Of a stretch of 51,090 nucleotides of DNA, positions 113 through 46,959 are shown piece by piece (within the stretch, counting starts at the first letter, position 1; the number at the start of each line of letters is the position of its first letter). The stretch comes from Octopus bimaculoides (taxonomy: Eukaryota), in assembly GCF_001194135.2 (NCBI RefSeq), contig NC_068997.1, forward strand, positions 19,916,602 to 19,967,691, given 5' to 3'. A program made the position numbers and the translations under genes. Under the pieces are notes generated by a model that did not search any database, had not been told where the DNA came from, and saw nothing but the letters and a program-made list of their open reading frames with translations.

Positions 113-230
113 AATGTCAAAGACGATGGTACACATTGTTGGTATCTAAAGCATTTTCGTTCCCAGATGTCTTGTAATATGTGTAAATCTGTTTTGTCTG
201 GTATGGGAAAAAAAGGATTATGTTGCCAAT
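113..230 (+). CDS. DGKB: Type I diacylglycerol kinase, internal exon encoding the first part of C1A
   Basis: Acceptor ttctactttcAG|, donor |GTAAGT, 118 nt, phase 0 to 1. Translates NVKDDGTHCWYLKHFRSQMSCNMCKSVLSGMGKKGLCCQ, which aligns by eye to the DGKB segment [39 protein letters not shown] as recalled. Probably co-orthologous to DGKA/B/G. Confidence 0.95.
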
Positions 231-3039: not shown

Positions 3040-3420
3040 ATATATTTCTACATGAAATCTTTCGAGCGGGATCGTTGCCAGTACCCCTGGACTGGCTCAT
3101 GTGCGGGCGACACATGAATTCTTTTGAGCGAGATCGTTGCCGGTGCCCCTGGGCTGGCTCTTGTGCGGGTGACACATGAGGTTTCTCGAGCGAGATGAGC
3201 GTGGCCGTTGCCAGTACCGCCTGACTGGCCTTCATGCGGGTGACACGTAAAAGCACCCACTACACTCTCTGAGTGGTTGGCGTTAGGAAGGGCATCCAGC
3301 TGTAGAAACTCTGCCAAATCAGATTGGAGCCTGGTGTAGCCATCTGGTTTCACCAGTCCTCAGTCAAATCGTCCAACCCATGCTAGCATGGAAAGCGGAC
3401 GTTAAACGACGACGACGACC
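3040..3420 (+). mobile_element. SINE-like family A, young subfamily with ~60-bp internal repeats x3
   Basis: 3060-3250 holds three tandem ~60-bp units. The tail is about 97% identical by eye to the reverse copy at 16860-17060. Confidence 0.8.
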
Positions 3421-3434
3421 TCCTCAACACTTTC

Positions 3435-3660
3435 TCTAATTCTTTTCTACTCTAGGCACAAAGCCTGAAATTTTGGAGGAGGGGACCAGTCGATTAGATT
3501 GACCCCAGTACATCACTGGTACTTAATTTATCGATCCTAAATGGATGAAAGGCAAAGTCAACCTTGGCGGAATTTGAACTCAGAATGTAAAGACAGACAA
3601 AATACCGCTAAATATTTCAGCCAGCATGCTAACATTTCTGCCAGATCGTTGCCTTTCTCT
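3435..3660 (-). mobile_element. tRNA-derived SINE family B
   Basis: Reverse of A-box TGGCAGAAATGTTAGC, B-box GAGTTCAAATTCC and the conserved core GACTTTGCCTTTCATCC...GATAAATTAAGTACCAG. Further minus-strand copies at ~5530-5735 and 18085-18268. Confidence 0.8.
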
Positions 3661-4892: not shown

Positions 4893-4981
4893 TTTGTAAA
4901 TATATTGTACATGAACGCTGTGTGCAGAAGGCCCCAGCATCTTGTATTATGACCTATGTGAAATCTAAGAAATCTTTCCAG
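4893..4981 (+). CDS. DGKB: DGK exon, end of C1A
   Basis: Polypyrimidine tract with tttacAG|, donor |GTATGT, 89 nt, phase 1 to 0. (F)[29 protein letters not shown] completes the HX12CX2CX13CX2CX4HX2CX7C motif. Confidence 0.95.
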
Positions 4982-6564
4982 GTATGTCTTGTTATTTTAT
5001 TTTATTTTTTTTTTCAAAGAATTTAAACCTAATTACTGTTGCTGATGTCGTAAGAACTTATAAACTGTGAGAGAATGTGCAATAAACCATTTAACCCTTT
5101 AGCATTCAAACCAGCCATATCTGGTCAAAATATTTGATTTGTTTTATGTTGAAACTGGCTATATCTGGCTTCTCGCTGGTATATTTATGCCCCTGCAGCT
5201 TAGCAGTTTTAGCAAGAAAGATCAAAAGATCAAAAGATCAAAAGATCAAGTACCAAGCTCAAGAAAAAGTAAAAAATAAATGCTAGAACTGATTTATTTG
5301 ACTGAAAGTTCTTCAAGGCGGTGCCCCAGCTTGGCCTCAGTTTAATGATTGAAACAAGCAAGAGATAAAAGATTAAAAAAGATAAAGTGAGCTGGAATGC
5401 CCGATAACAAACGGTCACAGCTTGATCTAACACCTTTGATCTTTGGTCCTTTCAATCAGGGCTGACTCGAGATTAAACAACTGCAACTACAGCAAAAGCT
5501 GAAACGAGTCAGAGCTGATATTGGTTTCAAACTTTGGCACAAGGCCAGCAATTTCTGGGGGAGTGCGTAAGTTGGTTACATTGATCCCAGTGTTCAACTA
5601 GTACTTATTTTATCAACCCCGAAAGGACGAAGGGCAAAGTCAACCACAGTGGAATTTGAACTCAGAATGTAAAGACAAATGAAATGCCTATAAGCATTTC
5701 ACCCAGCATGCTTATGATTCTGCCAGCTTGCGACCTTATGAATTATGTTATACTAATTGGCCCCATGCTGTCAAAAACGATGGCTAATTGTAGTATTTTA
5801 GATAGATAGACAGACGGATAGATAGACAAACAGACGGACAGACAGACAGACAGATAGGTAGGTAGGTAGATAGATAGATAGAGAGAGAGAAGGAGAGAGA
5901 CAGGCAGACAGATAGATAGACAAATAGACAGGTAGATAGATAGATAGACAGACAGATAGATATACATACATATATGTACATATATACACACACATATGAT
6001 AGGCTTTCAGTTTCCATCTACCAAATCCACTCACAAGGCTTTGGTTTGAGACACTTGCCCAAGGTGTCACACTGTGGAAGTGAAACTGGAACCAGGAACA
6101 CCTATGAATTTTTTTTCGTTTCTCCTTTTAGGTAAAAAATCAACCACACTACACATTGCAATCCACTTTAATGTAAAAAAAAACAAAAAAAAACTCACAT
6201 GCACACAAAACAAAACAACACAAAAATAAAATAAACACCCCCTTCTTTTTCATAGTTGAATGATTCTTCTGATGAGAAAGAAAACTGCCGCAACAACTGA
6301 CTCAAATGTCCAACATCGAAAGTCATCTTGCTTGTACGCTTACATTTATGTATAACATTCAAAGCTTTTCATTGGAGCAAGAAATGACATAAATTGTTAT
6401 AATTTGGTAGCAATTAAATAACAAGAAAGAACATTTTTACCTAAAGTAGACAGCTGTACTTTGTCAGTTTTGCAAAATTTATCTTAGGTTCACGGCACAT
6501 TGACAATTCTATGGAATAAAACCTATTTCTAGCCTACAGACAGAAGACTCAGTGTTCATTCTCA

Positions 6565-8752: not shown

Positions 8753-8863
8753 GATATGCAGCATCACTGGATAGATGGAAACTGTACCAAAAAATGTGAT
8801 AAATGCAAAAAGTCTATTAAGTCCGGCATCAATGGCAAAACATGTCGATGGTGTAAAGCATCG
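8753..8863 (+). CDS. DGKB: DGK exon, first part of C1B
   Basis: Acceptor tctctttcacAG|, donor |GTAAGT, 111 nt, phase 0 to 0. Translates DMQHHWIDGNCTKKCDKCKKSIKSGINGKTCRWCKAS. Confidence 0.95.
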
Positions 8864-12140: not shown

Positions 12141-12665
12141 ATATTTATATNNNNNNNNNNNNNNNNNNNNNNNNNNNNNNNNNNNNNNNNNNNNNNNNNN
12201 NNNNNNNNNNNNNNNNNNNNNNNNNNNNNNNNNNNNNNNNNNNNNNNNNNNNNNNNNNNNNNNNNNNNNNNNNNNNNNNNNNNNNNNNNNNNNNNNNNNN
12301 NNNNNNNNNNNNNNNNNNNNNNNNNNNNNNNNNNNNNNNNNNNNNNNNNNNNNNNNNNNNNNNNNNNNNNNNNNNNNNNNNNNNNNNNNNNNNNNNNNNN
12401 NNNNNNNNNNNNNNNNNNNNNNNNNNNNNNNNNNNNNNNNNNNNNNNNNNNNNNNNNNNNNNNNNNNNNNNNNNNNNNNNNNNNNNNNNNNNNNNNNNNN
12501 NNNNNNNNNNNNNNNNNNNNNNNNNNNNNNNNNNNNNNNNNNNNNNNNNNNNNNNNNNNNNNNNNNNNNNNNNNNNNNNNNNNNNNNNNNNNNNNNNNNN
12601 NNNNNNNNNNNNNNNNNNNNNNNNNNNNNNNNNNNNNNNNNNNNNNNNNNNNNNNNNNNNNNNNN

Positions 12666-15129: not shown

Positions 15130-16102
15130 GAGATATAAAGCAGCTGAAAAAGTTATTCAAATGTTTGATGCTTTTCGTGGATGGTTAGCAAAGTTCAAAT
15201 ATCAATATAGTCTGCATATCATTTAGATAACAATGGAATCAGGAAGTGCTGACATCCTCCAGACTGCATCAGAAGTTCTAGCGTAAGTGAAATGCTTCAT
15301 AGAAAGAAGTAAATATACAGCAAATATAATTTTTAATGTAGTCAGATGTAGATTATTTTGGAAAAGTCTAAAACTTTTTATATTATTAGCATGCTCGTTA
15401 GTACATCAGACAAAATAGTTAGTTGCAATTTTCTAGTTCTTTACATTCTGAGTTCCAATATCACTGAGGTCACCTTTGCCGTTCATCCTTGCAGGGTTGA
15501 TGAAATGAAGTACAAGTGAAGGACTGTGTTGATGTCATTGAGTTACCCCGTTTCATCTGAATTTGCTGGCCTTGTGCCAAAATTTGAAACTGTTATTTGC
15601 GTAGTCATCACAAGATCTACAATATCAGTGTGATTGGTTCCCTTAACAGTTTGTTTAAAGCAATGGTTCCCAAAGTGGGCAGTATTGCTCCCTTGTGGGG
15701 CAGTGGAAAGTTCCAAGGGGGCATTGAAAAAAAGTGGGGTGATAATGAGGTAGTGATTCATGTAAAAAGGGGTGATAATGGGGTGTCGATTCATGTAAAA
15801 GCAACAAAATAATGGATTCATTAGGTTAAGTTTTATTTGTGAAATACAGTTGCTTCGAATTTGTTTCAGAAAGAGGTCTATGTTTGCCTGTATCACAAAA
15901 AAGTACTCAGTATACTCAGTAAAGAAGTTGGTATTATAAAGGACACTCAACCATAGAAACTAAGCCGAAACTGACACTGGAACTCAACACAGCCCAGTCC
16001 CTTGCCAGATCCTGTCAAACCACCCAACCAATGCCAGCATGGAAAACAGACATTTGGTGGTGGTGGTGGTGGTGGTGGTGACAACGACATTGATGAAGAT
16101 GG

Positions 16103-16844: not shown

Positions 16845-17130
16845 ATCATCATCATCATCATCGTTTAACGTCTGCTTTCCATGCTAGCATGGGTTGGACG
16901 ATTTGACTGAGGACTGGTGAAACCGGATGGCTACACCAGGCTCCAATCTGATTTGGCAGAGTTTCTACAGCTGGATGCCCTTCCTAACGCCAACCACTCT
17001 GAGAGTGTAGTGGGTGCTTTTACCTGCCACCCGCATGAGGCCAGTCAGGTGGTACTGGCAATGGCCACACTCAAATGGTGTATTTTATGTGCCACCCACA
17101 CAAGAGCCAGTCCAGGGGCACTGGCAACAA
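16845..17130 (-). mobile_element. SINE-like family A, young subfamily
   Basis: Near-identical reverse complement of 3200-3415. Confidence 0.8.
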
Positions 17131-17230
17131 TCTTGCTCGAAAGTCCATTACACATGTCATGGGCACAAGTGCCAGAAAGGCGACGCTGGGCATAGGTACC
17201 ATCCCGATTTTGCTTTATATATATATATAT

Positions 17231-18080
17231 ATGAGGGGGTACCCAAAGGAAACCAGAATTTTGCAATATTATTTTATTCACTTAGTTTTTTATATGTCTA
17301 CATTTTTATCGCTTCAAAGTATTCTCCATTTGAAGCAATGCATCAGCCCAGACACGTTTTCCACTGTTTGGGGCAGTGCTGGAACTCTAGCGATGTGGTA
17401 CCTTTTAACGCCTGTCATTTTTTCCTTCACCTCTTCCACATCTGCAAATTCCGTAGCACCAGCTTTCATCACCAGTGATGGCCTTTAACAAGAGGTCGGG
17501 ATCAACTTTTAGCTGTTCTTTCAGTTCACAACACTCATTCAATCATGACTGCTTTTGATCTTCCGTGAGCTAGCAAAGCACAAGTTTTGCTGCAACTCTA
17601 TTCATTTGCAATTCTTCACTCAAAATTCATTGACAGGAGCTCCAGTACACACCAGTCATATATCAACAAGTCTGTCAATTGTTCGGTGACAATCCTCCAA
17701 GATTCGTTTGGGAGGTCAACAGCCATCCTGAATGAGGTTGGTCTTCAAGCAACAAGTGACCATTCCTAAAGCATGAAAACCACTCATAAACTTGTGTTTT
17801 GTTCATGGCAGCATCTTTGTAAGCTGTTTGAAGCATGACAACTGTTTCAGCCACCGTTTTCCCCAGCAGAAAACAGAATTTCATGGAAGCATATTGTTCC
17901 TTTAATTCAGCCATCGCAAAAATCGATGAACTGTGGAGAAGCACTGCAAAAAAAAAGATGTACCATGTGGCAGTATGACCTGACTGGACACGGCTGATGA
18001 GCAGACTGATGCCTGAGGGTGACATCAAGTGGCTTCTAGCAGTGGAAGCCTGAACTACAATGAGCTTGTCCTACACAGAA
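17231..18080 (-). mobile_element. Internally deleted mariner (Tc1/mariner) transposon
   Basis: N-terminal HTH MAELKEQYASMKFCFLLGKTVAETVVMLQTAYKDAAMNKTQVYEWFSCFRNGHLLLEDQPHSG, and C-terminus ...CIASNGEYFE near 17320-17350. One end (GAGGGGGTACCCAAA) abuts a (TA)n run. The other end is not found before a SINE at 18085. Confidence 0.85.
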
Positions 18081-18084
18081 CTAT

Positions 18085-18268
18085 TTCTTTATTGCCCACA
18101 AGGGGATAAACATAGAGGGGACAAACAAGGACAGACAAAGGGATTAAGCTGATTACATCAACCCCAGTGCGTAACTGGTACTTAATTTATTGACCCTGAA
18201 AGGATGAAAGGCAGAGTCGTCCTCGGTGGAATTTGAACTTAGAACGTAACGGCAGGCGAAATGCTTAA
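18085..18268 (-). mobile_element. tRNA-derived SINE family B, 5'-truncated, antisense, ~215 bp upstream of the DGK exon at 18484
   Basis: The reverse complement matches the + copy at ~43850-44033, including the TTTGTCCCCTCTATGTTTA(T/G)CCCCTTGTGGGCAAT tail. Confidence 0.8.
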
Positions 18269-18483
18269 GTTACTATCTTAAGGAATTGCTATCATATTGT
18301 ATTTAACTGATTTTTTTTTTCAAAAGGGTCTCTAATTTGATGTCAATGCTCTTGATATTTGACACTTCTTTGCACATATATGCACGTGTGTGTGTGTGTG
18401 CGTGTTCATGTATTTGGTTTCCTTCCTATCTTTCTTGTTAACCTTTCTAAACCTTTTTTTTTTGTCATTTATTTTCATTTCAG

Positions 18484-18582
18484 TATCATGAAAAATGTGC
18501 TTCGAGTATAAAACAAGAATGTGATTTAGGAGAGTTCAGAGAGCATATTTTACCACCGACATCCATTGTTCCAGCAGTTGTG
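18484..18582 (+). CDS. DGKB: DGK exon, end of C1B plus the conserved HILPP extension
   Basis: Acceptor attttcatttcAG|, donor |GTAAGA, 99 nt, phase 0 to 0. Translates [33 protein letters not shown] (compare DGKB [33 protein letters not shown]). Confidence 0.95.
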
Positions 18583-18606
18583 GTAAGAAGAATCATTAAC
18601 ATAGTT

Positions 18607-18660
<54 letters not shown>

Positions 18661-19493
18661 GTTATTATTATTATTATTGTTGTTATTATTATTATTATTA
18701 TTATTAAAAACAGTGAGTGACAAGATCGTTAGCACACTAGACAAAATGCTTGGTGGCACTTGGTCTGTCTTTATGATCTGAGTTCAAATTCTGCCTTTTA
18801 TCCCTCTTTGGATTTGATAACATAAGTACCAGTTGGGTAGTGGGAATCAACATTACTGACTAGCCCCTTTCTCCTCAAAAACTGGACCAAAATTTGAAGC
18901 CATTATTATTCATCATCATCATATTATTATATTATTATTATTATTTTATGTTTGACTTTTGTTTTGCATTTGTACAAGTTGGCTCCAAGTCTCACCCATA
19001 GACTTCAAGAGACAACAAGTTAGAAATTCATGTAGGTGTTATGCCTAGGGTACCATATATTTGGATTTGTACATAGTGTTGTTCTAGAGAATGTTTAAGA
19101 AACCATAAGAAAATTATGTGTTTGTTTTAAAATTTGAGATCACATAGACAGTATTTTACGTAGGATATGGGCAGTTCCCATGAGCACTATCTTTTGAACT
19201 TCAGCCATTTTGGGGTTTCCTGGTATCTGAGCTAGGTAGTAATTATTATTATTATTATTATTATTGTTATTAAAGACAATGAAATGGCAGAATTACTAGC
19301 TCACTGGACAAAACGCTTAGCATTGTTTCTTCCGGTTTTATATTCTGAGTCTAAATTCCACCAAGGTTAAATAACTTTACCTCTCACCCTTTTGGCATGA
19401 TAAAATAAATGCCAGTCAAATACTAGAGTCAATATAACCAAATAGTCACCTTTCCAACAAATTTCAGGCTTTGTACCTATAGTAGAAGGATTA

Positions 19494-20168: not shown

Positions 20169-21515
20169 ATGATGGCGGCAGCCAAAATTCTTAACGGTAT
20201 TTCGTCTGCCACTACATTCTGAGTTCAGATTCCACCGAGGTCAGTTTTGTCTTTCATCCTTTTGGGACCAATAAATTAAGCACCAGTTGAGTCCAGGGCT
20301 CAATGTAATTGACTTACCCCTCCCCTAAAATTTCAAACCTTGTGCCTAGAGTAGAAAAGATTATCATTATTATTATTATTATTAATAATAATAATTTTAT
20401 TATTATTATTATTATTAGTAGTAGTAGTAGTAGTAGTATTGAAGGCTCTGAGGTGGCAGTATTGTTACTGCACCAAAATGCTTAGCAGCAGTTCTTTTGG
20501 CTTTATGTTCAAGGTCAAGGTCGACTTTGCTCTTCATCTTCTTGAGGCCAATAAAATCACTGCCAGTTGAGTACTAGATTTATGTAATCAACTATCTCTA
20601 CCCTCAAAATTTCTGATCTGTCTACATTACTATTATGTATTTGTATTGATGTTCGTAATTTGATCAATGATTCTTTTTGCTGATTTTAGAGGAGTGGCGA
20701 TGTACACAGACATCAAGCCACAGGTAGTCCTCAGACGTTGCATTGCTTATTTAGATTAGGAACATAACTGCATAACTGCATCATACATTTGTGTCTTATT
20801 GCCTTTTAGAGTGTGCTGAATATAGTTCATGTCAATTCTTTTGTCTTACATAATTCAAACAAATCAAATGTTATTTTTAATGTTCTTAATATCAAAATGC
20901 TCCTTTTAATGTTCCCTAATATCAAAAGACAAAACAATCTAATTCTGATAACAATGTCTGGTCTGTTAATAATAGTGGTGTTTGTTAATTTTATATACAT
21001 TGCTTATGTCTTATTTCAGGTATCTGAGAATTTTACCTTGCATGGGTTGGTGTAGTAGTGACCTTATTATTGTTGTTGTTGTTGTTACTATCATAATTGC
21101 TTAGTTGCATTTCTTCCATGTTGAATATGTTCGAAGCTAAATCCCACTGAAGTCAAATCTTTTATGATTGATACAATAACGTATCAGTCAAGTACTGGGG
21201 TGGATGTAATTGACTTTTCTATCTCTTCAAAAAATTGCTAGCCAGAATTAGAAAGAATTATTATTATCATTATTGTTTGGTGGTATTTCTTCTGGCTCTA
21301 TATCATTCTGAGTTCAAATCCCACCAGGTTTAACCTTACCTTACGTCCTTTCAGAATCAATAAAACAATGTACCAGTCAAATACTGGGGTTGATATAATC
21401 AACCAACTCCATTCTTCTAAAACTATTGACTTTGGTCCAAAATTTGAAACAATTATAAAGATTTAGAAATAATACATTTCTAAATCTCTCAGAGAGATTT
21501 ATGCAGTAGTGATAC

Positions 21516-21935
21516 ATTGAAGTAGTTGTATGCTGTCAACTTAATGTGACAGTCCCATGAAGGGAATAATACTACTGTTGTTTAGACCTAGGAAGCTGCA
21601 CCTCTTTCTGTCGGCCTTGACACATTTCCTGTGTCCTTATGTTTACAAGAGGGAGACAAGCACCTCCACACAGCTAAGCCTACAAGAGCTTGACAGGCAT
21701 CTTCAACTAACAAGTCATGCTGCTCTAGACTGATGATGAGCAAAGACTCAGAAACATGTCTCTGGATGCAGGCTTAGCTGGGTGGAGGTGCTTGTCTCCC
21801 CCTTGTAAACATAAGGACACAGGAAATGTGTCAAGGCCAACAGGAAGTGGTGCAGCTTCCTAGGTCTAAACAACAGTAGTATTATTTCCTTCATGGGACT
21901 GTCACATTAAGTTGACAGCATACAACTGCTTCAAT
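21516..21935. mobile_element. Fold-back element: 169-bp inverted arms around a hammerhead-containing loop (possibly Penelope-like derived)
   Basis: Arms 21516-21684 and 21767-21935 are reverse complements with 8 mismatches by manual comparison. Confidence 0.85.
21724..21766 (+). ncRNA. Minimal type I hammerhead ribozyme motif
   Basis: TCTAGA-CTGATGA-TGAG(CAAAGA)CTCA-GAAA-CATGT-C-TCTGGA. Helix I has 6 bp (one G.U), core CUGAUGA, helix II 4 bp, GAAA, palindromic helix III ACAUGU and a GUC cleavage triplet at 21758-21760. Confidence 0.8.
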
Positions 21936-22559
21936 TATAAAGATATCAAGCTGCTAGAATCACTAGTGTTGGATAAAATGCTAGGTGGCATTTCTACCAA
22001 CACTTCACTTCCTGAGTCCAAATCTCAACAAGGTCAACTTTACCTTTCATCCTTTCAGAGTTGATAAAATAACTGTTTCCATACATCTCCACTGATTATG
22101 AAGAGATTTCTTATGTATTTCCTAGATTTTTTTGTTTTTTGTTTTTCTGTTCCATGGTTACAAAATCTATTTTACAGACCATGAAGCCTTACAGATTTTT
22201 TTCTCTCATTTGGTTTAGACTGTGTTCTCATTTCTTAATGTCTATCATCACACACATTTTGTTTGAAAATAATGGCTACCTTAGAAAGCTATCATAACCT
22301 GTTAAAAAGTGTTCCTGTCATTTTGCACTGATAATTACACATTATTAAACTAATTAGTTGTAGAAACTGGTTCTCAGTGGTTTTACTTTTTTTTTTCTGA
22401 TTTCAATTTCTATAGGAAAAGTTCTACAATAAAACCATCATTTTACTATTTAATGCTATTGAATTTGCAGCACTGAAGTCTGGTATTTTATTGATTTTCA
22501 GAGTTCTTTCCAAAGACCATATCCCAAAATTGCTTACTTCATTTATTTATTTATTTATC

Positions 22560-23949: not shown

Positions 23950-24577
23950 AAGTGCAAAGAATATTAATACTGTATATAGGGATCAGTTCCAGAAATTCTG
24001 AGCCGGAAACTACAGCCTAGAAGATGAGCCTCCTTCTGGAAGATCTGTAGAGCTTGACAAGGACATCCTGCAAACCCTTGTGGAACAAAATCCCATCATT
24101 ACTGTAGAGGAACTAGCAGAGAAACTTGGATTTCGTCATTCAACCATTCATCAACACCAGTGCTAGAAGGAAAATGACAATCTTTGGTTTCAAGATGAAA
24201 GGTGTTCTTCCATCAGGATAAATCTTGGCATTCCATAGGCTGGAGCAGTTTTAATTGGAAATGATGCCCCATGTAACATATTTGCCAGACATTGCCCCAT
24301 CTGATTATCATTTATTCTGCAGTCTTCAAAACCATTTGGACAGAAAAAATATGAATTCTGTAGACGAAATCAGAGGAGTACTGGTGGAGAATTTTTCATC
24401 ATAGACAAGTGAGTTTTGGAAGAGGGGCCTTGCAAGTCTATCAGATAGATGGAAGAGCATTGTAGGAAATTGTAGAAATTGAAGGAGAGTACATTTTAGA
24501 TTATAAAAAACTTTGTTTATCTTAATTTTGAAAAATAAAAGTATAAAAAACTGCATTATTTATGGGATGACCTAGTA
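23950..24577 (+). mobile_element. Internally deleted mariner transposon (second family)
   Basis: GNYSLEDEPPSGRSVELDKDILQTLVEQNPIITVEELAEKLG and YLPDIAPSDYHLFCSLQNHL (the mariner YSPDLAPSD motif). Terminal TTATGGGATGACCTAGTA is followed by (TA)n. Confidence 0.9.
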
Positions 24578-25744
24578 TATATATATAACTTAGTTATTGC
24601 ACATTGGAAAATCCAGCCTTTATTTTTCTACTTAAATTGTACAAATTTGTAACTTTTAAAAGTTCTGTCTGTGCACTCTAAGAAGCTTATTCCTAAGAAA
24701 AATACAGCAGGTGTTTATTGAAGTAGCAGGCTGTTATTGACCACAGGGGTATAAGTTCAAATCTAACCTCTACATTCACCTAACCATACTTNNNNNNNNN
24801 NNNNNNNNNNNNNNNNNNNNNNNNNNNNNNNNNNNNNNNNNNNNNNNNNNNNNNNNNNNNNNNNNNNNNNNNNNNNNNNNNNNNNNNNNNNNNNNNNNNN
24901 NNNNNNNNNNNNNNNNNNNNNNNNNNNNNNNNNNNNNNNNNNNNNNNNNNNNNNNNNNNNNNNNNNNNNNNNNNNNNNNNNNNNNNNNNNNNNNNNNNNN
25001 NNNNNNNNNNNNNNNNNNNNNNNNNNNNNNNNNNNNNNNNNNNNNNNNNNNNNNNNNNNNNNNNNNNNNNNNNNNNNNNNNNNNNNNNNNNNNNNNNNNN
25101 NNNNNNNNNNNNNNNNNNNNNNNNNNNNNNNNNNNNNNNNNNNNNNNNNNNNNNNNNNNNNNNNNNNNNNNNNNNNNNNNNNNNNNNNNNNNNNNNNNNN
25201 NNNNNNNNNNNNNNNNNNNNNNNNNNNNNNNNNNNNNNNNNNNNNNNNNNNNNNNNNNNNNNNNNNNNNNNNNNNNNNNNNNNNNNNNNNNNNNNNNNNN
25301 NNNNNNNNNNNNNNNNNNNNNNNNNNNNNNNNNNNNNNNNNNNNNNNNNNNNNNNNNNNNNNNNNNNNNNNNNNNNNNNNNNNNNNNNNNNNNNNNNNNN
25401 NNNNNNNNNNNNNNNNNNNNNNNNNNNNNNNNNNNNNNNNNNNNNNNNNNNNNNNNNNNNNNNNNNNNNNNNNNNNNNNNNNNNNNNNNNNNNNNNNNNN
25501 NNNNNNNNNNNNNNNNNNNNNNNNNNNNNNNNNNNNNNNNNNNNNNNNNNNNNNNNNNNNNNNNNNNNNNNNNNNNNNNNNNNNNNNNNNNNNNNNNNNN
25601 NNNNNNNNNNNNNNNNNNNNNNNNNNNNNNNNNNNNNNNNNNNNNNNNNNNNNNNNNNNNNNNNNNNNNNNNNNNNNNNNNNNNNNNNNNNNNNNNNNNN
25701 NNNNNNNNNNNNNNNNNNNNNNNNNNNNNNNNNNNNNNNNNNNN

Positions 25745-31410: not shown

Positions 31411-32060
31411 TGCTTCAAATTCCGCTGAGGTCAACTTTGCCTTTCATCCTTTCGGGGTTGATAAATTAAGTACCAGTTGCATACTGGGGTCGATGTAATC
31501 GACTATCCCCCTCCCCATAATATCAGACCTTGTGCATATAGTAGAAATTATTATTATTATTATTATTATTATTATTGTTGTTATTATTAACGTGGTGAGC
31601 TGGCAGAATTGTTAGCATGCTGGGCAAAATGGTTAGCAGTATTTCATCTGCCATTACATTCTGAGTTCAAATTCCACCAAAGTCGACTTTGGCTTTCATC
31701 CTTTCGGGGTCAATAAATCAAGTACCAGTGAAACGCTGGGGGTCAATGTAATTGACTAGTCCCCTCCCACGAAATTTCAGGCCTTGTGTCTTTAGTAAAA
31801 AGGATTATTACTATCATTATTATTTTTATTATGAAGTCAGTGAGCTGGGAGGATCATTAGCACACCAGACAAAATATTTTGTGGCATTTCTTCTGGTTTT
31901 ATGTTCTGAGTTCAAATTCCACTGAGGTTGACTTTGCCTTTCATCCTGTTGGAAGTTGATAGAATAAATAGCAGATGAACACTGGGGTTGGTGTATTCAA
32001 CTAGCCCTTTCCCCTAAAAATTCTAAAAATTCATTTTCTTGTGCCTACAGTTGAAAAAGT
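31410..32060 (+). mobile_element. Three head-to-tail family B SINEs
   Basis: Cores at ~31425, 31680 and 31925, each followed by an (ATT)n tail. Confidence 0.8.
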
Positions 32061-32284: not shown

Positions 32285-33840
32285 AATTAACTTTGTCATT
32301 ATTAAGCCGGTAATTTAGAGCATAAATTAACACGAAATTGTGATGGAAGGTTTTAATTTAGATCATTTAAAAACATAAACTTTGTATTTTAGAACCAGAG
32401 ATGGTGCCAGATGGTTGGCATCAAACAGTTAATAATGACAAAGTTTTTGATTAGCTTTAATTATTTTCAAACTTAATTGAAAAACAAGGCAGTATGTTTC
32501 AACAGAAATATGGTAACGAAAGGATTAATATCATTGAGTATAGAAAAAGATGGTGGTGGTGGTGGTAGGTGTGTGTGGGGGTAATGATAGAAACTGAACT
32601 TAGATATCTTGTGATATTTATCTCAATCCCTTAAGCCTATTGATTCCAACCTGCCCAAGACAGCCTGGTTCTATGGCAACAACTTCCTGTTTTAAAGTGA
32701 TATAAGTTAAAAACGCCAATCAAAATCCCATGTTAATTTACGTTCCAAACATCAGCTTAATAATGACAAGATTATTTTTAGTCAATTCTTAATTGTTTTG
32801 AAAATTAATTGAAACAAAGGTAGTATATTTCAAGTGAAATATGGTAATAAATGGATTGATATTGTTGTTGTTGTTGGCACTCCGTCGCTTACGACGTTGA
32901 GGGTTCCAGTTGATCCGATCAATGGAACAACCTGCTCGTGAAATTAACGTGCAAGTGGCTGAGCACTCCACAGACACGTGTACCCTTAACGTAGTTCTCG
33001 GGGATATTCAGCATGACACAGTGTGACAAGGCTGACCCTTTGAATTACAGGCACAACAGAGACAGGAAGTAAGAGTGAGAGAAAGTTGTGGTGGAAGAGT
33101 ACAGTAGGGTTCGCCACCATCCCCTGCCGGAGCCTCGTGGAGCTTTAGGTGTTTTTGCTCANNNNNNNNNNNNNNNNNNNNNNNNNNNNNNNNNNNNNNN
33201 NNNNNNNNNNNNNNNNNNNNNNNNNNNNNNNNNNNNNNNNNNNNNNNNNNNNNNNNNNNNNNNNNNNNNNNNNNNNNNNNNNNNNNNNNNNNNNNNNNNN
33301 NNNNNNNNNNNNNNNNNNNNNNNNNNNNNNNNNNNNNNNNNNNNNNNNNNNNNNNNNNNNNNNNNNNNNNNNNNNNNNNNNNNNNNNNNNNNNNNNNNNN
33401 NNNNNNNNNNNNNNNNNNNNNNNNNNNNNNNNNNNNNNNNNNNNNNNNNNNNNNNNNNNNNNNNNNNNNNNNNNNNNNNNNNNNNNNNNNNNNNNNNNNN
33501 NNNNNNNNNNNNNNNNNNNNNNNNNNNNNNNNNNNNNNNNNNNNNNNNNNNNNNNNNNNNNNNNNNNNNNNNNNNNNNNNNNNNNNNNNNNNNNNNNNNN
33601 NNNNNNNNNNNNNNNNNNNNNNNNNNNNNNNNNNNNNNNNNNNNNNNNNNNNNNNNNNNNNNNNNNNNNNNNNNNNNNNNNNNNNNNNNNNNNNNNNAAA
33701 GTGATCTAAATAAAAAAAAAACAACCTCCAATCAAAATTCCATGTTAATTATGTTCCAAACACCAGCTTAATAATGACATGGTTATTTTTAATAAATTCT
33801 TCATTATTTTCTAAAATTGATTATGGTAACAAATGGGTGA
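32285..33840. mobile_element. Cluster of related TTAA-type MITE segments
   Basis: Segments ~32285-32527, ~32630-32860 and ~33698-33840 share TTAATAATGACA...AATTGA...ATATGGTAA. The first ends ATATGGTAACGAAAGGATTAA, a piggyBac-like terminus. A SINE and a gap interrupt the cluster. Confidence 0.5.
32875..33161 (-). mobile_element. SINE family D (tRNA head, RTE-like body, (AAC)n tail)
   Basis: GGCACTCCGTC...GAGGGTTCCAGTTGATCCGATCAATGGAAC...GTACCCTTAACGTAGTTCTC. Related pieces at ~8320-8485, 10490-10590, 11500-11740, 23610-23915, 29665-29885, 46125-46450 and 47500-47700. Confidence 0.75.
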
Positions 33841-36846: not shown

Positions 36847-37880
36847 CATATAATCACATACATATCTTTACATGTGTGCACACACACACACACACATATA
36901 TATATGTATATATATATATATNNNNNNNNNNNNNNNNNNNNNNNNNNNNNNNNNNNNNNNNNNNNNNNNNNNNNNNNNNNNNNNNNNNNNNNNNNNNNNN
37001 NNNNNNNNNNNNNNNNNNNNNNNNNNNNNNNNNNNNNNNNNNNNNNNNNNNNNNNNNNNNNNNNNNNNNNNNNNNNNNNNNNNNNNNNNNNNNNNNNNNN
37101 NNNNNNNNNNNNNNNNNNNNNNNNNNNNNNNNNNNNNNNNNNNNNNNNNNNNNNNNNNNNNNNNNNNNNNNNNNNNNNNNNNNNNNNNNNNNNNNNNNNN
37201 NNNNNNNNNNNNNNNNNNNNNNNNNNNNNNNNNNNNNNNNNNNNNNNNNNNNNNNNNNNNNNNNNNNNNNNNNNNNNNNNNNNNNNNNNNNNNNNNNNNN
37301 NNNNNNNNNNNNNNNNNNNNNNNNNNNNNNNNNNNNNNNNNNNNNNNNNNNNNNNNNNNNNNNNNNNNNNNNNNNNNNNNNNNNNNNNNNNNNNNNNNNN
37401 NNNNNNNNNNNNNNNNNNNNNNNNNNNNNNNNNNNNNNNNNNNNNNNNNNNNNNNNNNNNNNNNNNNNNNNNNNNNNNNNNNNNNNNNNNNNNNNNNNNN
37501 NNNNNNNNNNNNNNNNNNNNNNNNNNNNNNNNNNNNNNNNNNNNNNNNNNNNNNNNNNNNNNNNNNNNNNNNNNNNNNNNNNNNNNNNNNNNNNNNNNNN
37601 NNNNNNNATAAAAAGCAATCTACTTCCTTATGGCTTGTTGCCACTGCCATCACCCCCACCACCATCACCCACCGCCATCATCAACACCACCACCAACATC
37701 ATCATCACCACCATCATCACCAACAATATCATCACCATACACCTCTGACATCACCACCACCACCACCACCACCATATACAACCACTGCACACCCCCACCA
37801 CCATCATCACTATCATCACCACTACCACCACCACCACCATCACCATCACCGCCACCCCCATTACCAATGCCACCATCATA
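36245..37880. repeat. Compound microsatellite field ((CA)n, (TA)n, (TG)n, (CAC/CAT)n) around the gap at 36922-37607
   Basis: Direct reading. It explains the His/Tyr/Ile/Val/Cys-rich spurious ORFs. Many smaller (ATT)n, (TCTA)n, (CAT)n and (TA)n tracts occur throughout the window. Confidence 0.95.
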
Positions 37881-40798: not shown

Positions 40799-41386
40799 GT
40801 CATTGTCCTTGTCATCATTTAACATCAGTTCCATGCTGGCATGGGTTGAATGGTTCAACAAGATCCCACGAGCCAGAGGATTGTATCACACCCCAATGTC
40901 TCTGGTAGGCATGGCCAACTGCTGGTTTTCAATAAACAACCTTACCCAGACTTGTGCCTTGGAGGGAAATTTTCTAGGTGCAATTCCATGGTCATTCATG
41001 ACCAGATGGGATCCTTTTTTTTTTTTTTTTTTGCTGCTGTTGTTGTTAAGGTGATAAACTAGCAGAATCTTTAGCCAGTTGGATCAAAAGCTTTGCAGTA
41101 TTTCTTCTAGCTTTATGTTCTGAGTTCAAATTCAGCTGAGGTCAATTTACCATTCATCCTTTTTTTGTGGTCAATAAAAAATAAGTACTGATTGAATAAT
41201 GGAGTCAGTATAATTGACTAGCCCCCTCCCTCAAATTTCAGGGCTTGTGCCTATACTAAGAAAGAATTATTATTATTGTTATTGCTATTGTTGTTGCTGT
41301 TGTTATTGTCTTCTTATAGTCAACTAAACCCCAGCCACCCCTAAAAGCAGTGGAAAATTCTGGCCTTGTTCTAAGAATTAGAAAGA

Positions 41387-43384: not shown

Positions 43385-44230
43385 CGTGAGCAGGCAGAAT
43401 CGTTGGCATGCTGGGCAAAATGCTTAGTGGTATTTCATCTGCTGCTACATTCTGAGTTCAAATTCCGCTGAGATCAACTTCACCTTTCATTCTTTCAGGG
43501 CCAATAAATTGAGTACCAGTTGAGTACTGTGGTCAATGAAATTGACTAGCCCCCTCCCCAAAATTTCAGGCCTTGCGTCTATAAAGCATTGAACTGGCGG
43601 AATCATTTGCATGCTGGACAAAATGCTTAGCAGCATTTCATCTGTCTTAACATCCTGAGTTCAAATATTGTCATGGTTGACTTTGCCTTTCATCCTTTCA
43701 GGGTTCGATATAATAAGTAGCAGCTGAGCACTAGGGTTCATATAACCAACTTATGACCACCCAACCACAAATTGCTCGCCATGTGCCAAAATATAAAACT
43801 AATATCATTGAAGGGGCAAAATGGCAGAATTCTTAGCACGCCGGGCAAAATGCTTAGCGGTGTTTCGTCTGCCATTATGTTCTGAGTTCAAATTCCGCTG
43901 AGGTCGACTTTGCCTTTCATCCTTTCGGGGTCGATAAATTAAGTGCCAGTTACACACTGGGGTCGATATGATTGACTTATTACCTTTGTTTGTCCCCTCT
44001 ATGTTTAGCCCCTTGTGGGCAATGAAGAAATAAGAATCATTAGCACACCAGGCAAACTGCATAAATGGCATGTCATCCATCTTTACGTTCTGAGTTCAAA
44101 TCCCGCCAAGGTTGACTTTGCATTTCATCCTTTCAGGATCAACAAAATAAGTAACAGTTGAGCATGGTATATAATCGACTTACCCCTCCCCTTCAATTAC
44201 TGGCCTTGTGCCAAAATTTGAAACCAATAA
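43385..44230 (+). mobile_element. Four head-to-tail family B SINEs
   Basis: B-boxes at ~43455, 43657, 43885 and 44092. Additional + copies at ~41055-41270 and 46530-46665. Confidence 0.8.
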
Positions 44231-45297: not shown

Positions 45298-46959
45298 ATA
45301 TATATTTATATGTATGTATGTATGCGTGTCTGTATTTGTCACCACCATCACCACTTAATAACCAATATTGGTTTGTTTATGGCCCCATAACTTAGTTTAG
45401 CAAAATAGACTGATAGAGTAAGTACCAACAGATTTATTTCAATTTGATTTCAATTCTAAAAGAAAAAAAAAAGTATTTTTTTTTTACTTGAACAATAGAA
45501 ATATTTTATTCTCATACCAATTTTTAAACAAGTTCCCCAATTATTGTTGAAATATCTATAAAAATCTCAACAGATCACAATATTCTTTAAATATAATTAC
45601 AATGTACTTTTTTATTGTTGAGAAGAAATATATATTTTCTTGGGTGTCTTTGAGAAAATTACCATGATATGTATTCCATTCTAAATGGTTTAGGTCAACA
45701 TGACTTTGCTTTGGAGTGTCTGATACAGAATATCTGTGGCAATTTATGAACTTAGCTGACCAACCTTCTTCACCCCAATCCCCTACAGCAGCTATGACTT
45801 TCAGCTTAATTCAAATTTTGATTGCATGTTCAAACCTGTTATTAGTTTGTGTCAATGTTAACATATGCAACAATACCTGGCAATAAATTATAGGGCATGT
45901 CACCAAACCCCTTTAGTAAGAGTTGGAAAATGCAAAATAGTTGATACATACATTAAAATGAAACAGAACCTGAAATTTACTACGTTATGTATGAACAAGT
46001 CTGTCATTGAGTGATGTTATTTGAGCAGAATAATATAAGCTGTTATATAACACCAGAAGGTCTATTTCCTAAATAAATTTTCAGATTTATTGTACGAGAT
46101 AGATCACTCCATTGTAAAGAGTAAAGACCCCCTTTGGTCATGAATGACCATGGGATTGCACCTAGAAAGTTCTCCTCCCAGACACAAGTCCAGGCATGAT
46201 TGTTTATGGAAGACCAGCAGTCGCCCATGCATACCAGCCTCTCCTCTCCATGCCATTGATGTTATCCAAGAGAAAAGCAAAGGCCAATACAACTTGGCAC
46301 CAGTAACATTGCAACTCATTTCTACAAATGAGTGAATTGGAGCTACATGAAATAGAGTATCTTGCTCAAGAACACAACACAGAGCCCAGTCCGGAAATTG
46401 AACTCATTACATCATGATCGTAAGCCCAACACTCTAACCGCTTAAGCCATCCTCTATTGTAGCATACCTCATGCCAAACAAGCCCTTTGTAACAAAATAA
46501 CATTGTTGTGTTTGTGGAGACAAATATGGCAAGCTGCCAGAACCGTTTGCACACCAGGCAAAATCCTTAGTGGCATTTCATTCACTTTTACATTCTGAGT
46601 TCAAATTCTGCTGAGGTCGACTTTACCTTTCGTTTTTTCGAGGTTGATAAAATAAATACCAGTTGNNNNNNNNNNNNNNNNNNNNNNNNNNNNNNNNNNN
46701 NNNNNNNNNNNNNNNNNNNNNNNNNNNNNNNNNNNNNNNNNNNNNNNNNNNNNNNNNNNNNNNNNNNNNNNNNNNNNNNNNNNNNNNNNNNNNNNNNNNN
46801 NNNNNNNNNNNNNNNNNNNNNNNNNNNNNNNNNNNNNNNNNNNNNNNNNNNNNNNNNNNNNNNNNNNNNNNNNNNNNNNNNNNNNNNNNNNNNNNNNNNN
46901 NNNNNNNNNNNNNNNNNNNNNNNNNNNNNNNNNNNNNNNNNNNNNNNNNNNNNNNTAAT

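What the first reader, a model, noticed from the sequence alone, without database searches (positions are those of the whole stretch)
21516..21935. Fold-back element carrying an intact-looking hammerhead ribozyme in its loop, on the sense strand of a DGK intron
Seen: 169-bp arms (8 mismatches) enclose an 82-nt loop. The loop contains TCTAGA-CUGAUGA-UGAG(CAAAGA)CUCA-GAAA-CAUGU-C-UCUGGA, i.e. the full catalytic core, 6-bp helix I, 4-bp helix II, palindromic helix III (ACAUGU) and a GUC triplet. The right arm starts immediately after helix I, 7 nt past the predicted cut. The first helix II pair is U-A rather than the usual G-C. Established: minimal type I hammerheads with palindromic helix III occur in Penelope-like elements and retrozymes, and cleave best as dimers. 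Inference: this is a non-autonomous, ribozyme-processed retroelement whose 5'-inverted duplication makes it look like a MITE. It is co-transcribed with DGK pre-mRNA, so it yields a long dsRNA hairpin (ADAR/Dicer substrate) with a self-cleavage site at its tip.
Basis: partly seen in the sequence, partly recalled or inferred. Interest (0 to 1): 0.88.

Follow-up and report, generated by a model that had tools for sequence, protein, structure and literature searches.

The report
Hammerhead-bearing retroelement insertion in DGK intron
A 469-bp piece of a ribozyme-carrying jumping gene landed head-to-head in an intron of a diacylglycerol kinase gene; this is an ordinary relic of a known class (Penelope-like elements and their retrozyme derivatives), not a new device.

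Summary
That is also the sense strand of a type I DGK gene, with exons at 113-230, 4893-4981, 8753-8863 and 18463-18591.

New findings:
- A 13-bp target-site duplication (CAATTATAAAGAT) brackets a 469-bp insert, 21463-21931. It sits in the AT-rich tail between two SINE-like repeats.
- The insert reads: 53-nt extension, then an inverted 169-nt copy, then a direct 251-nt copy. This is the published layout of Penelope-like element (PLE) insertions.
- The hammerhead caps its own 26-bp G·U-rich stem, which forms only on the + strand.

The ribozyme matches the canonical metazoan type I design, including a single-pair helix III with a palindromic tetraloop, so it should need a partner copy to cleave. 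Only one copy is present, 10.1-11.1 is U-A, and no Rfam hammerhead model matches. I expect it to be weak or inactive in cis.

No second copy could be retrieved, so family conservation, covariation and non-autonomy remain untested. Verdict: a new member of a known kind, of modest interest.

The parts
21450..21462 (.). Left copy of the 13-bp target-site duplication, CAATTATAAAGAT. It lies in the AT-rich tail of the upstream SINE-like repeat.
   Evidence: Longest shared word between the two flanks. P(>=13) = 3.5e-4 with shuffled flanks, and 2.8% with real window pairs, a figure inflated by microsatellites.
21463..21515 (-). 53-nt extension between the TSD and the inverted copy. It is either a PLE-type 'tail' present at one end only, or templated filler. 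It holds two overlapping small palindromes (21459-21487 and 21481-21501).
   Evidence: It shows no homology to the loop, the arm or the flanks. The joined flanks are continuous without it. The PLE tail is described.
21516..21684 (-). Inverted, 5'-truncated copy of the element (left arm). Its inner end corresponds to the 7th nt after the hammerhead cut.
21685..21931 (+). Direct 5'-truncated copy: 39 nt upstream sequence, the hammerhead, then the 3' body (right arm). The last 4 nt of the arm (CAAT, 21932-21935) overlap the right TSD copy, which suggests microhomology.
   Evidence: 251 nt including the CAAT: -82.7 kcal/mol, z = -2.9. No reading frame is open through it in either copy.
21692..21720 (+). 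5' strand of the distal stem that closes helix I. It pairs with 21768-21796 (26 bp, 5 G.U). It is followed by the internal loop, 5' UGC (21721-21723) opposite 3' U (21767).
   Evidence: The stem is absent on the - strand.
21724..21766 (+). Type I hammerhead motif: helix I 6 bp, CUGAUGA, helix II 4 bp with loop CAAAGA, GAAA, a 1-bp helix III with palindromic CAUG tetraloop, and GUC. The predicted cut is after C21760.
   Evidence: The architecture is as described for canonical metazoan type I HHRs.
21768..21796 (+). 3' strand of the distal stem. It is also the start of the right arm, so in the genomic fold-back it can pair either with 21692-21720 or with the left arm.
21932..21944 (.). Right copy of the 13-bp target-site duplication.
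18463..18591 (+). Nearest upstream exon of the host type I DGK gene. Earlier exons lie at 113-230, 4893-4981 and 8753-8863.
   Evidence: tblastn with DGK relatives, splice sites, Pfam C1_1 and the domain architecture of relatives.

Best explanation
This is a dead, heavily 5'-truncated, head-to-head insertion of a hammerhead-bearing Penelope-like retroelement, or of a non-coding retrozyme-type derivative mobilised by one.

Insertion (inferred). The element's RT/endonuclease cut an AT-rich SINE tail in a type I DGK intron and primed reverse transcription on both DNA strands. One cDNA started at the distal start site, so it kept a 53-nt extension. It stopped 6 nt short of the ribozyme cut site, giving the inverted 169-nt copy. 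The other cDNA ran 251 nt, through the ribozyme, giving the direct copy. Joining them produced a 469-bp insert flanked by a 13-bp duplication, which looks like a MITE.

Ribozyme role (from the literature). The hammerhead belongs to the element. In the parent it sits at the tip of a long imperfect stem and, having only a one-pair helix III with a palindromic tetraloop, cleaves multimeric transcripts by pairing two copies.

At this locus (inferred). Only one copy is present, so self-cleavage in cis should be weak or absent. In DGK pre-mRNA the arms would form a 169-bp duplex with the ribozyme stem-loop at its tip. That is a by-product of insertion, not a designed function.

Shown: the anatomy, the TSD, the strand, the motif, the strand-specific stem and the host gene. 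Inferred: the PLE machinery, the two-strand priming and the activity.
For: - Inverted repeat and hairpin. The arms differ at 8 sites, so this is a real and fairly old duplication.
- 13-bp TSD. The joined flanks read through as SINE tail followed by the next SINE head, as in other arrays of the window.
- Published PLE anatomy: strong 5' truncation, an inverted 5'-truncated copy adjacent to the direct copy, a 30-40-bp tail often at one end only, AT-rich or microsatellite targets, and an HHR near the 3' end (PMC8557442).
- PLE enzymology: the Anolis PLE protein cleaves and extends both strands, prefers 5'-ATT-3' in AT-rich DNA, and starts RT internally about 90 nt past the HHR cut, with two start sites defining the tail (PMC11167929).
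- The hammerhead is on the strand and side predicted by that layout: it lies in the longer, direct copy, 171-175 nt from the 3' end.
- Motif statistics.
- Architecture equals the canonical metazoan type I HHR: helix I 6 bp, helix II 4 bp, helix III 1-2 bp capped by a 2-4-nt palindromic loop (PMC4209133). Axolotl HHR_Amex1 has a single pair plus palindromic tetraloop, and HHR_Amex2 has a U.U at the base of helix II yet still cleaves (PMC7229834).
- Loop 2 CAAAGA against CAAAUA in the Schistosoma Sm1-derived N79 ribozyme.
- The hammerhead-compatible fold lies within 1.9 kcal/mol of the MFE and is closed by a 26-bp stem with 5 G.U pairs. The + strand scores z = -2.65 and the - strand z = -0.23.
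- Helix III: adding the single A-U pair closing the CAUG tetraloop raises the monomer fold from -6.5 to -0.4 kcal/mol, about +6. As an ACAUGU self-duplex between two copies it contributes -6.0.
- About 43% of Xenopus retrozyme copies are intronic, so such a location is common.
Against: - No second copy of the arm or the ribozyme could be retrieved: not in the window, nor in metagenome, prokaryotic-genome or viral collections, nor in the paper library. Family membership, core conservation and covariation are therefore untested.
- No RT or GIY-YIG coding sequence was seen in the window. Only ORFs of 30 aa or more on the + strand were scanned, and that scan was insensitive.
- No Rfam hammerhead model matches, neither at gathering score nor at E <= 10 on 551 or 69 nt.
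- U10.1-A11.1 replaces the G-C pair that the PLE-HHR authors list as highly conserved.
- The 53-nt extension is longer than the usual 30-40 bp and is palindromic, so it may be filler rather than a tail.
- The TSD's significance falls to 2.8% against real window sequence.
Confidence: 0.72

Rival explanations
1. Chance hammerhead look-alike. The fold-back has another origin, such as a MITE, a Foldback-type DNA transposon or a palindromic duplication made during repair. The CUGAUGA...GAAA...GUC arrangement in its loop would then be a coincidence picked out by a scan of many windows.
For: - The relaxed descriptor is expected about 75 times per Gb by chance.
- No Rfam hammerhead hit.
- U-A at 10.1-11.1.
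- No other copy is available to show conservation.
Against: - The expected chance count inside one 82-nt loop on one strand is about 3e-6, derived.
- Several features the descriptor did not demand all fit real type I hammerheads: palindromic tetraloop, loop 2 matching at 5 of 6 positions, 6-bp helix I followed by an internal loop, and a strand-specific closing stem.
- The TSD is 13 bp and lies 53 nt from the left arm. That does not fit cut-and-paste transposons.
Confidence: 0.14
2. Exapted host element. The sense-strand ribozyme, the long hairpin, or both, are kept by selection to regulate DGK pre-mRNA through intron cleavage, splicing choice, ADAR editing or small-RNA production. The analogy is the conserved intronic hammerheads of amniote genes.
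For: - Sense orientation in a DGK intron.
- The core is intact despite 4.7% divergence between the arms.
- Precedent: conserved intronic HHRs in RECK, CTCL and DTNB (PMC6155905).
Against: - At about 2.4% divergence per copy, roughly one change is expected in the 43-nt motif. Intactness therefore needs no selection.
- The monomer is predicted to fold poorly into the active form.
- Intronic copies of such elements are commonplace.
- No orthologue could be compared.
Confidence: 0.04
3. Box C/D snoRNA hosted in the intron. The GAUGAUGA would be a C box.
For: The only Rfam matches are to C/D-box families (SNORD109A 14.1 bits, SNORD44 10.3 bits and others).
Against: - All scores lie far below the gathering scores of 35-80 bits, with E-values of 1-9.
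- The matches cover only the UGAUGA word.
- No CUGA D box follows at a usable distance.
Confidence: 0.01

Closest known systems
Penelope-like elements (Penelope/Poseidon, Neptune, Hydra clades) with hammerhead motifs in their pseudo-LTRs
   Same: - A head-to-head pair of 5'-truncated copies, with an extension at one end only.
- An AT-rich target containing ATT, and a TSD longer than 4 bp.
- A type I hammerhead a short distance upstream of the 3' end, with a weak palindromic helix III that implies dimeric action.
   Different: - No RT/GIY-YIG ORF is present or linked here.
- Most metazoan PLE hammerheads are 'minimal' variants with a long helix II and an unpaired base before 10.1. This one has the canonical 6-bp/4-bp layout.
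- The region after the ribozyme is non-coding in both copies. In the Anolis Poseidon element the ORF starts inside the ribozyme.
- The extension is 53 nt rather than 30-40 nt.
Metazoan non-LTR retrozymes (tandem 170-400-bp repeats with canonical type I hammerheads; coral, mussel, axolotl, Xenopus)
   Same: - Canonical type I hammerhead, with helix I closed by a long stem.
- Non-coding and AT-rich: the 251-nt direct copy is about 45% GC by my count of the sequence, and published units are below 45-50% GC.
- The 251-nt direct copy falls within the size range of a retrozyme unit.
- TSD longer than 4 bp, and solitary copies are frequent, many in introns.
   Different: - There is no tandem repeat and only one hammerhead.
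- The 53-nt extension shows no homology to the sequence upstream of the ribozyme, so nothing indicates more than one unit.
- The inverted partner is a PLE-insertion trait and is not described for retrozymes.
Schistosoma Sm-alpha / Sm1 hammerhead (and its engineered N79 derivative)
   Same: - 6-bp helix I followed by an internal loop and a distal stem.
- 4-bp helix II with a 6-nt loop, CAAAUA against CAAAGA here.
- GUC cleavage triplet.
   Different: - Helix II starts G-C in Sm1 and U-A here.
- Sm1 has a longer helix III.
- The internal-loop nucleotides differ: 5' (G)UAC / 3' UCCA in N79 against 5' UGC / 3' U here.
Conserved intronic hammerheads of amniotes (Rfam HH9/HH10; RECK, CTCL, DTNB introns)
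   Same: A type I hammerhead on the sense strand of an intron, thought to derive from retroelements.
   Different: Those are conserved across orders and fold as monomers. Here conservation could not be tested, helix III is minimal, and the element still carries fresh insertion hallmarks.
MITEs / Foldback DNA transposons
   Same: Long, nearly perfect inverted arms and a short unique centre.
   Different: The TSD is 13 bp and does not abut the left arm. The arms are two copies of the same 3' end of a directional element rather than transposase-binding termini.

Membership tests
Hammerhead ribozyme, type I (canonical metazoan) | Catalytic core C3-U4-G5-A6-N7-G8-A9 ... G12-A13-A14 ... A15.1-U16.1, with H17 at the cleavage site | tested here: met
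   CUGAUGA, GAA, A...U and C17 read at 21730-21760. This is the only descriptor hit in the window.
Hammerhead ribozyme, type I (canonical metazoan) | Helix I of about 6 bp open to the flanks, helix II of about 4 bp capped by a loop, helix III of 1-2 bp capped by a 2-4-nt palindromic loop | tested here: met
   6 bp (one U.G), 4 bp plus a 6-nt loop, and an A-U pair plus the CAUG tetraloop. Definition taken. Pair probabilities: helix II >= 0.97, helix I 0.35-0.78.
Hammerhead ribozyme, type I (canonical metazoan) | G10.1-C11.1 pair at the base of helix II | tested here: not met
   It is U21737-A21750. The G-C pair is described as highly conserved. A natural family with U.U at this position still cleaves.
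Hammerhead ribozyme, type I (canonical metazoan) | Match to the Rfam hammerhead covariance models (clan CL00010) at gathering score | tested here: not met
   No hammerhead family is listed at gathering score or at E <= 10 on 551 nt or 69 nt. I could not check how sensitive these models are to hammerheads with a 1-bp helix III.
Hammerhead ribozyme, type I (canonical metazoan) | Site-specific self-cleavage after H17 | not testable with these tools
   This needs in vitro transcription of monomer and dimer RNA.
Hammerhead ribozyme, type I (canonical metazoan) | Conservation of the core, with compensatory changes in the helices, among family members | tested here: inconclusive
   No other copy could be retrieved.
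Penelope-like element insertion | ORF encoding a telomerase-like RT plus a GIY-YIG endonuclease | tested here: inconclusive
   None lies within the 469-bp insert, and all three frames are closed. The window scan was partial (+ strand ORFs only) and insensitive. A 5'-truncated copy is expected to lack the ORF.
Penelope-like element insertion | 5'-truncated copy with an adjacent inverted 5'-truncated copy, both outer ends being the element's 3' end | tested here: met
   A 169-nt inverted copy plus a 251-nt direct copy sharing the same 3' 169 nt. Definition taken.
Penelope-like element insertion | Optional 30-40-bp tail at one end | tested here: inconclusive
   A 53-nt extra segment sits at the left end only, inside the TSD. 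Without other copies it cannot be shown to be element sequence.
Penelope-like element insertion | AT-rich or microsatellite target with a variable TSD | tested here: met
   The TSD CAATTATAAAGAT lies in a SINE tail that is (ATT)n-like in sister copies. Target preference taken.
Non-LTR retrozyme | Head-to-tail tandem repeats with a type I hammerhead in each unit (at least two units for an active element) | tested here: not met
   There is one hammerhead only, and no direct repeat of the unit. It could still be a solitary or truncated offspring copy, as described.
MITE / Foldback DNA transposon | Terminal inverted repeats directly flanked by a short TSD of fixed length | tested here: not met
   There is no direct repeat at the arm boundaries. 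The only significant repeat is 13 bp and lies 53 nt outside the left arm.
Box C/D snoRNA | C box and D box brought together by a terminal stem, with a score above the family threshold | tested here: not met
   The best score is 14.1 bits against a threshold of 35, and there is no D box.

The most novel reading that the evidence does not exclude
The locus may be more than a relic, in two ways.

(a) The inner end of the inverted copy lies 6 nt from the predicted cut. It could therefore be a genomic footprint of reverse transcription running off a template that the hammerhead had already cleaved in vivo. Recent in vitro work on a PLE found no need for cleavage and no RNA ends at the cut site.

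(b) In DGK pre-mRNA, a 169-bp duplex capped by a sense-strand ribozyme could couple editing or dicing with trans-dimer cleavage of the intron.

Neither reading is excluded, and neither has support beyond one coincidence. A random truncation point falls within 7 nt of the cut about 6% of the time.
Probability: 0.1. Interest if true: 0.6.

Novelty: new member of a known kind. Interest (0 to 1): 0.3.

Why it matters
The locus is a clean, fully bounded example of how a PLE-type insertion produces a MITE-like fold-back, with the TSD, the one-sided extension, both truncation points and the ribozyme all readable in 495 bp.

It offers a cheap test of an open question: whether hammerhead cleavage precedes reverse transcription in vivo. 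If many copies of this family have their inverted arm ending at the cut site, that would count as evidence.

It also places a long perfect-ish duplex on the sense strand of a signalling-kinase intron in a protostome invertebrate, which may matter for dsRNA sensing or editing studies. As a biological novelty it is modest, because solitary intronic copies of hammerhead-bearing elements are common in animals.

Tried and rejected
- Protein-database trick to find other copies, using the 58-aa arm ORF: no candidates. This is uninformative, because short ORFs of this genome are evidently not in that collection. The window's own C1 exon ORFs were not found either, and long window ORFs are not on record.
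- Exact-pattern scans: the 31-nt ribozyme and two 24-nt arm words against metagenome and prokaryotic-genome contigs, and a relaxed ribozyme pattern plus an arm word against viral contigs. All returned zero. These collections probably hold no DNA of the host, so the result is not evidence of absence.
- Literature string searches for the ribozyme and for the SINE-like repeat: nothing relevant. The supplement of the PLE catalogue paper is not held.
- Pfam on concatenated + strand ORFs to find further exons or a PLE RT: no hits at all, not even the C1 domain known to be present, so the approach was insensitive. tblastn with retrieved DGK relatives solved the exon question instead.
- PDB sequence search: only PKC C1 domains, so it could not separate DGK from PKC.
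- Test for a tandem unit, comparing the 53-nt extension with the sequence upstream of the ribozyme: no similarity.
- Test for an ORF continuing from the ribozyme into the arm, as in Anolis Poseidon: stops in all frames, shared by both copies.
- snoRNA reading: rejected.
- Organism: not identified. The closest named DGKs are from a rotifer, an ostracod and flies. A cephalopod or other mollusc is my unverified guess, based on composition and repeat content.

Full report
**1. The observation**

The fold-back is exactly as described. The arms are 21516-21684 and 21767-21935, 169 nt each and 95% complementary, with 82 nt between them. They differ at 8 positions, 6 of them transitions. As single-stranded RNA the 420 nt fold to -325.4 kcal/mol, against -118 ± 6 for shuffles, z = -34.8. 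Because the arms differ, an assembly artefact is unlikely, even though this is a gapped draft with ten N runs.

The hammerhead motif reads as follows:
- Helix I: UCUAGA (21724-21729) pairs with UCUGGA (21761-21766), 6 bp with one U·G.
- Core: CUGAUGA (21730-21736).
- Helix II: UGAG/CUCA, closing the loop CAAAGA.
- GAA, then A15.1, the tetraloop CAUG, U16.1 and C17 (21760).
- The right arm begins at 21767, the seventh base after the predicted cut.

**2. Is it more than chance?**

I wrote a type I descriptor. It requires at least 5 of 6 helix I pairs, CUGANGA, a 4-bp helix II with a 3-10-nt loop, GAAA, 0-6 nt, then U, H and the other helix I strand. It hits only this site on either strand of the window. 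A wider descriptor covering the 'minimal' PLE variants also hits only this site.

In 40 Mb of second-order Markov sequence modelled on the window, the descriptor scored 3 times. That is about 0.004 per window, or on the order of 75 per Gb. In a genome-scale scan the motif alone is therefore not decisive.

Features the descriptor did not require carry the weight:
- **Loop 3** is a palindromic tetraloop on a single A-U pair. This is the design described for canonical metazoan type I hammerheads and for axolotl HHR_Amex1.
- **Loop 2**, CAAAGA, matches the CAAAUA of the Schistosoma Sm1-derived N79 ribozyme at 5 of 6 positions. The sequence CTGATGAGTCCCAAATAGGACGAAAC is printed in the paper read and occurs in other papers.
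- **The 'loop' of the fold-back is structured.** Positions 21692-21720 pair with 21768-21796 (26 bp, five G·U), so the hammerhead caps its own imperfect hairpin. With helices I and II enforced and the core left open, the 115-nt stretch folds to -39.8 kcal/mol, against an unconstrained MFE of -41.7.
- **The stem is strand-specific.** The + strand scores z = -2.65, with 3 of 200 shuffles as stable. The - strand scores z = -0.23 and loses the stem. This is what G·U pairs predict for a structure that matters at the RNA level on the ribozyme strand.
- **Helix I** is followed by an asymmetric internal loop (5' UGC, 3' U) and then the distal stem. Sm1/N79 has the same plan.

**3. What the fold-back is**

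A 13-bp direct repeat, CAATTATAAAGAT, lies at 21450-21462 and 21932-21944. With shuffled flanks, a repeat this long appears in 0.035% of trials. With real pairs of window segments the figure is 2.8%, inflated by the many microsatellites.

The flanks, joined across the repeat, align continuously with head-to-tail arrays of a SINE-like repeat found elsewhere in the window, for example 43421-43716. The left flank is the AT-rich tail of one repeat copy, and the right flank is the head of the next.

The insert is therefore 21463-21931, 469 bp, and consists of:
- a 53-nt segment unrelated to anything nearby;
- the inverted 169-nt copy;
- the direct 251-nt copy (247 nt up to the TSD), whose last four bases (CAAT) overlap the duplication.

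This is point for point the anatomy published for Penelope-like elements. [quoted passage not shown] A 30-40-bp tail is often present at one end only, targets are AT-rich or microsatellite, and the hammerhead lies near the 3' end (PMC8557442).

Biochemistry on an Anolis PLE explains the layout. The protein cleaves and extends both DNA strands and prefers 5'-ATT-3' in AT-rich DNA. It starts reverse transcription internally, about 90 nt past the hammerhead cut, at two sites whose spacing is the tail (PMC11167929).

Two cDNAs primed on opposite strands and joined in the middle would give exactly this fold-back. Both outer ends are the element's 3' end, and the centre holds whatever extra 5' sequence the longer copy has. 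The hammerhead lies in the longer copy, on its sense strand, 171-175 nt from its 3' end, as the model requires.

**4. Host gene and strand**

Four + strand exons with canonical AG/GT boundaries lie at 113-230, 4893-4981, 8753-8863 and 18463-18591. They encode two C1 domains and the segment that follows them (Pfam C1_1, E = 1.2e-11).

An exhaustive HMMER search found 455 relatives. The six long high-scoring relatives I scanned (55-64% identity) all combine EF-hands, two C1 domains and DAGK_cat. Five also carry DAG_kinase_N and four DAGK_acc; some of these proteins are partial. Named ones are diacylglycerol kinases of a rotifer, an ostracod and flies.

The host is thus a protostome invertebrate. 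I could not identify the species. No catalytic exon lies in the remaining 32 kb of the window, so the element sits in an intron, on the sense strand.

**5. Would the ribozyme work here?**

As a monomer, the hammerhead fold including helix III scores -0.4 kcal/mol, against -8.1 for the MFE of the 43-mer. Helix II is solid (pair probability at least 0.97) and helix I moderate (0.35-0.78). An intermolecular ACAUGU/ACAUGU helix III contributes -6.0 kcal/mol.

That is the signature of hammerheads that act as dimers in tandem transcripts. Only one copy exists at this locus.

Further negatives:
- U10.1-A11.1 replaces a pair described as highly conserved. An axolotl family with U·U at that position still cleaves weakly.
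- No Rfam hammerhead model matches, at gathering score or at E ≤ 10 on 551 or 69 nt. The only weak matches are C/D-box snoRNA models triggered by UGAUGA, far below threshold.

I therefore expect weak or no cleavage in cis. In DGK pre-mRNA the arms should form a 169-bp duplex with the ribozyme stem-loop at its tip. Editing or dicing of that duplex is plausible but is pure inference.

**6. What remains open**

I could not retrieve a second copy. There is none in the window. There are none in the accessible DNA collections, which are microbial, viral or metagenomic. The protein route also failed. Conservation of the core, covariation, copy number, tandem forms and an autonomous partner are therefore untested.

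Both copies share stop codons in all three frames downstream of the ribozyme. The source element was thus non-coding there, which leans towards a retrozyme-like or untranslated-region origin but does not settle 'non-autonomous'.

The arms differ by 4.7%. At that age about one substitution is expected in the 43-nt motif, so its intactness does not require selection.

The inverted copy ends 6 nt from the predicted cut. That would fit run-off on a self-cleaved template, but a random end would fall that close about 6% of the time, and this is a single case.

**7. Verdict**

The best explanation, at about 0.72, is a dead head-to-head insertion of a hammerhead-bearing PLE-type retroelement in a type I DGK intron. 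A chance motif in an unrelated fold-back stands at about 0.14, and host exaptation at about 0.04. This is a new member of a known kind, of modest interest.

Noticed in passing
window 31414-32019, 43409-44224; also 3489-3612(-), 5518-5730(-), 15431-15596, 18150-18244(-), 19326-19441, 20196-20287, 21274-21456, 21947-22072, 41078-41162, 46560-46655: A SINE-like repeat of about 200-250 bp (…GTTCTGAGTTCAAATTCCGC…GTCGACTTTGCCTTTCATCCTTTCGGGGTCGATAAA…) occurs at least 15 times at about 70-78% identity. Copies often lie head to tail, with AT-rich or (ATT)n tails between them. The hammerhead element inserted into one such tail. Rfam reports no tRNA or other hit for these copies at gathering score.
   Followed up: partly
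window 113-230, 4893-4981, 8753-8863, 18463-18591 (+): Four exons of a type I diacylglycerol kinase (two C1 domains plus the following segment), separated by introns of about 3.8-9.6 kb. The intron after 18591 is longer than 32 kb, or else its exons are hidden in N gaps. The closest named relatives are protostome DGKs.
   Followed up: yes
window 17678-18070 (-) and 24002-24401 (+): Mariner/Mos1-type transposase remnants. The first matches Pfam HTH_48 (E = 2.5e-10). The second carries a …DIAPSDYHLF… segment typical of mariner, but its Pfam matches were only weak HTH families, none reaching the curated cut-off.
   Followed up: partly
window 21459-21501: The 53-nt extension next to the left TSD contains two overlapping palindromes: AGATTTAGAAAT…ATTTCTAAATCT and AAATCTCTC-A-GAGAGATTT. 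Both reuse the AGATTT that spans the TSD boundary. This looks like snap-back templated filler made during joining rather than element sequence.
   Followed up: partly
window 3048-3353 (-) and 16917-17195 (+): Two inverted copies of another repeat, each encoding the same ORF start (MKPDGYTRLQSDLAEFLQLDALPNANHSESVVGAFTCHPHE…). There is no Pfam match.
   Followed up: partly
window 12151-12665, 24792-25744, 33162-33697, 36922-37607 and six shorter runs: Ten N gaps (3,398 N in all) and very dense TA/CA-type microsatellites. GC is 35% excluding N, and CpG observed/expected is 0.32. This is a draft assembly of a methylated, repeat-rich invertebrate genome.
   Followed up: no
window 21886-21935: The element's 3' end carries a small hairpin, CTGTCA-CATTAAGT-TGACAG, followed by an AC-rich run (CATACAAC). 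This recalls the AC-rich stem-loop where the Anolis PLE starts reverse transcription.
   Followed up: no
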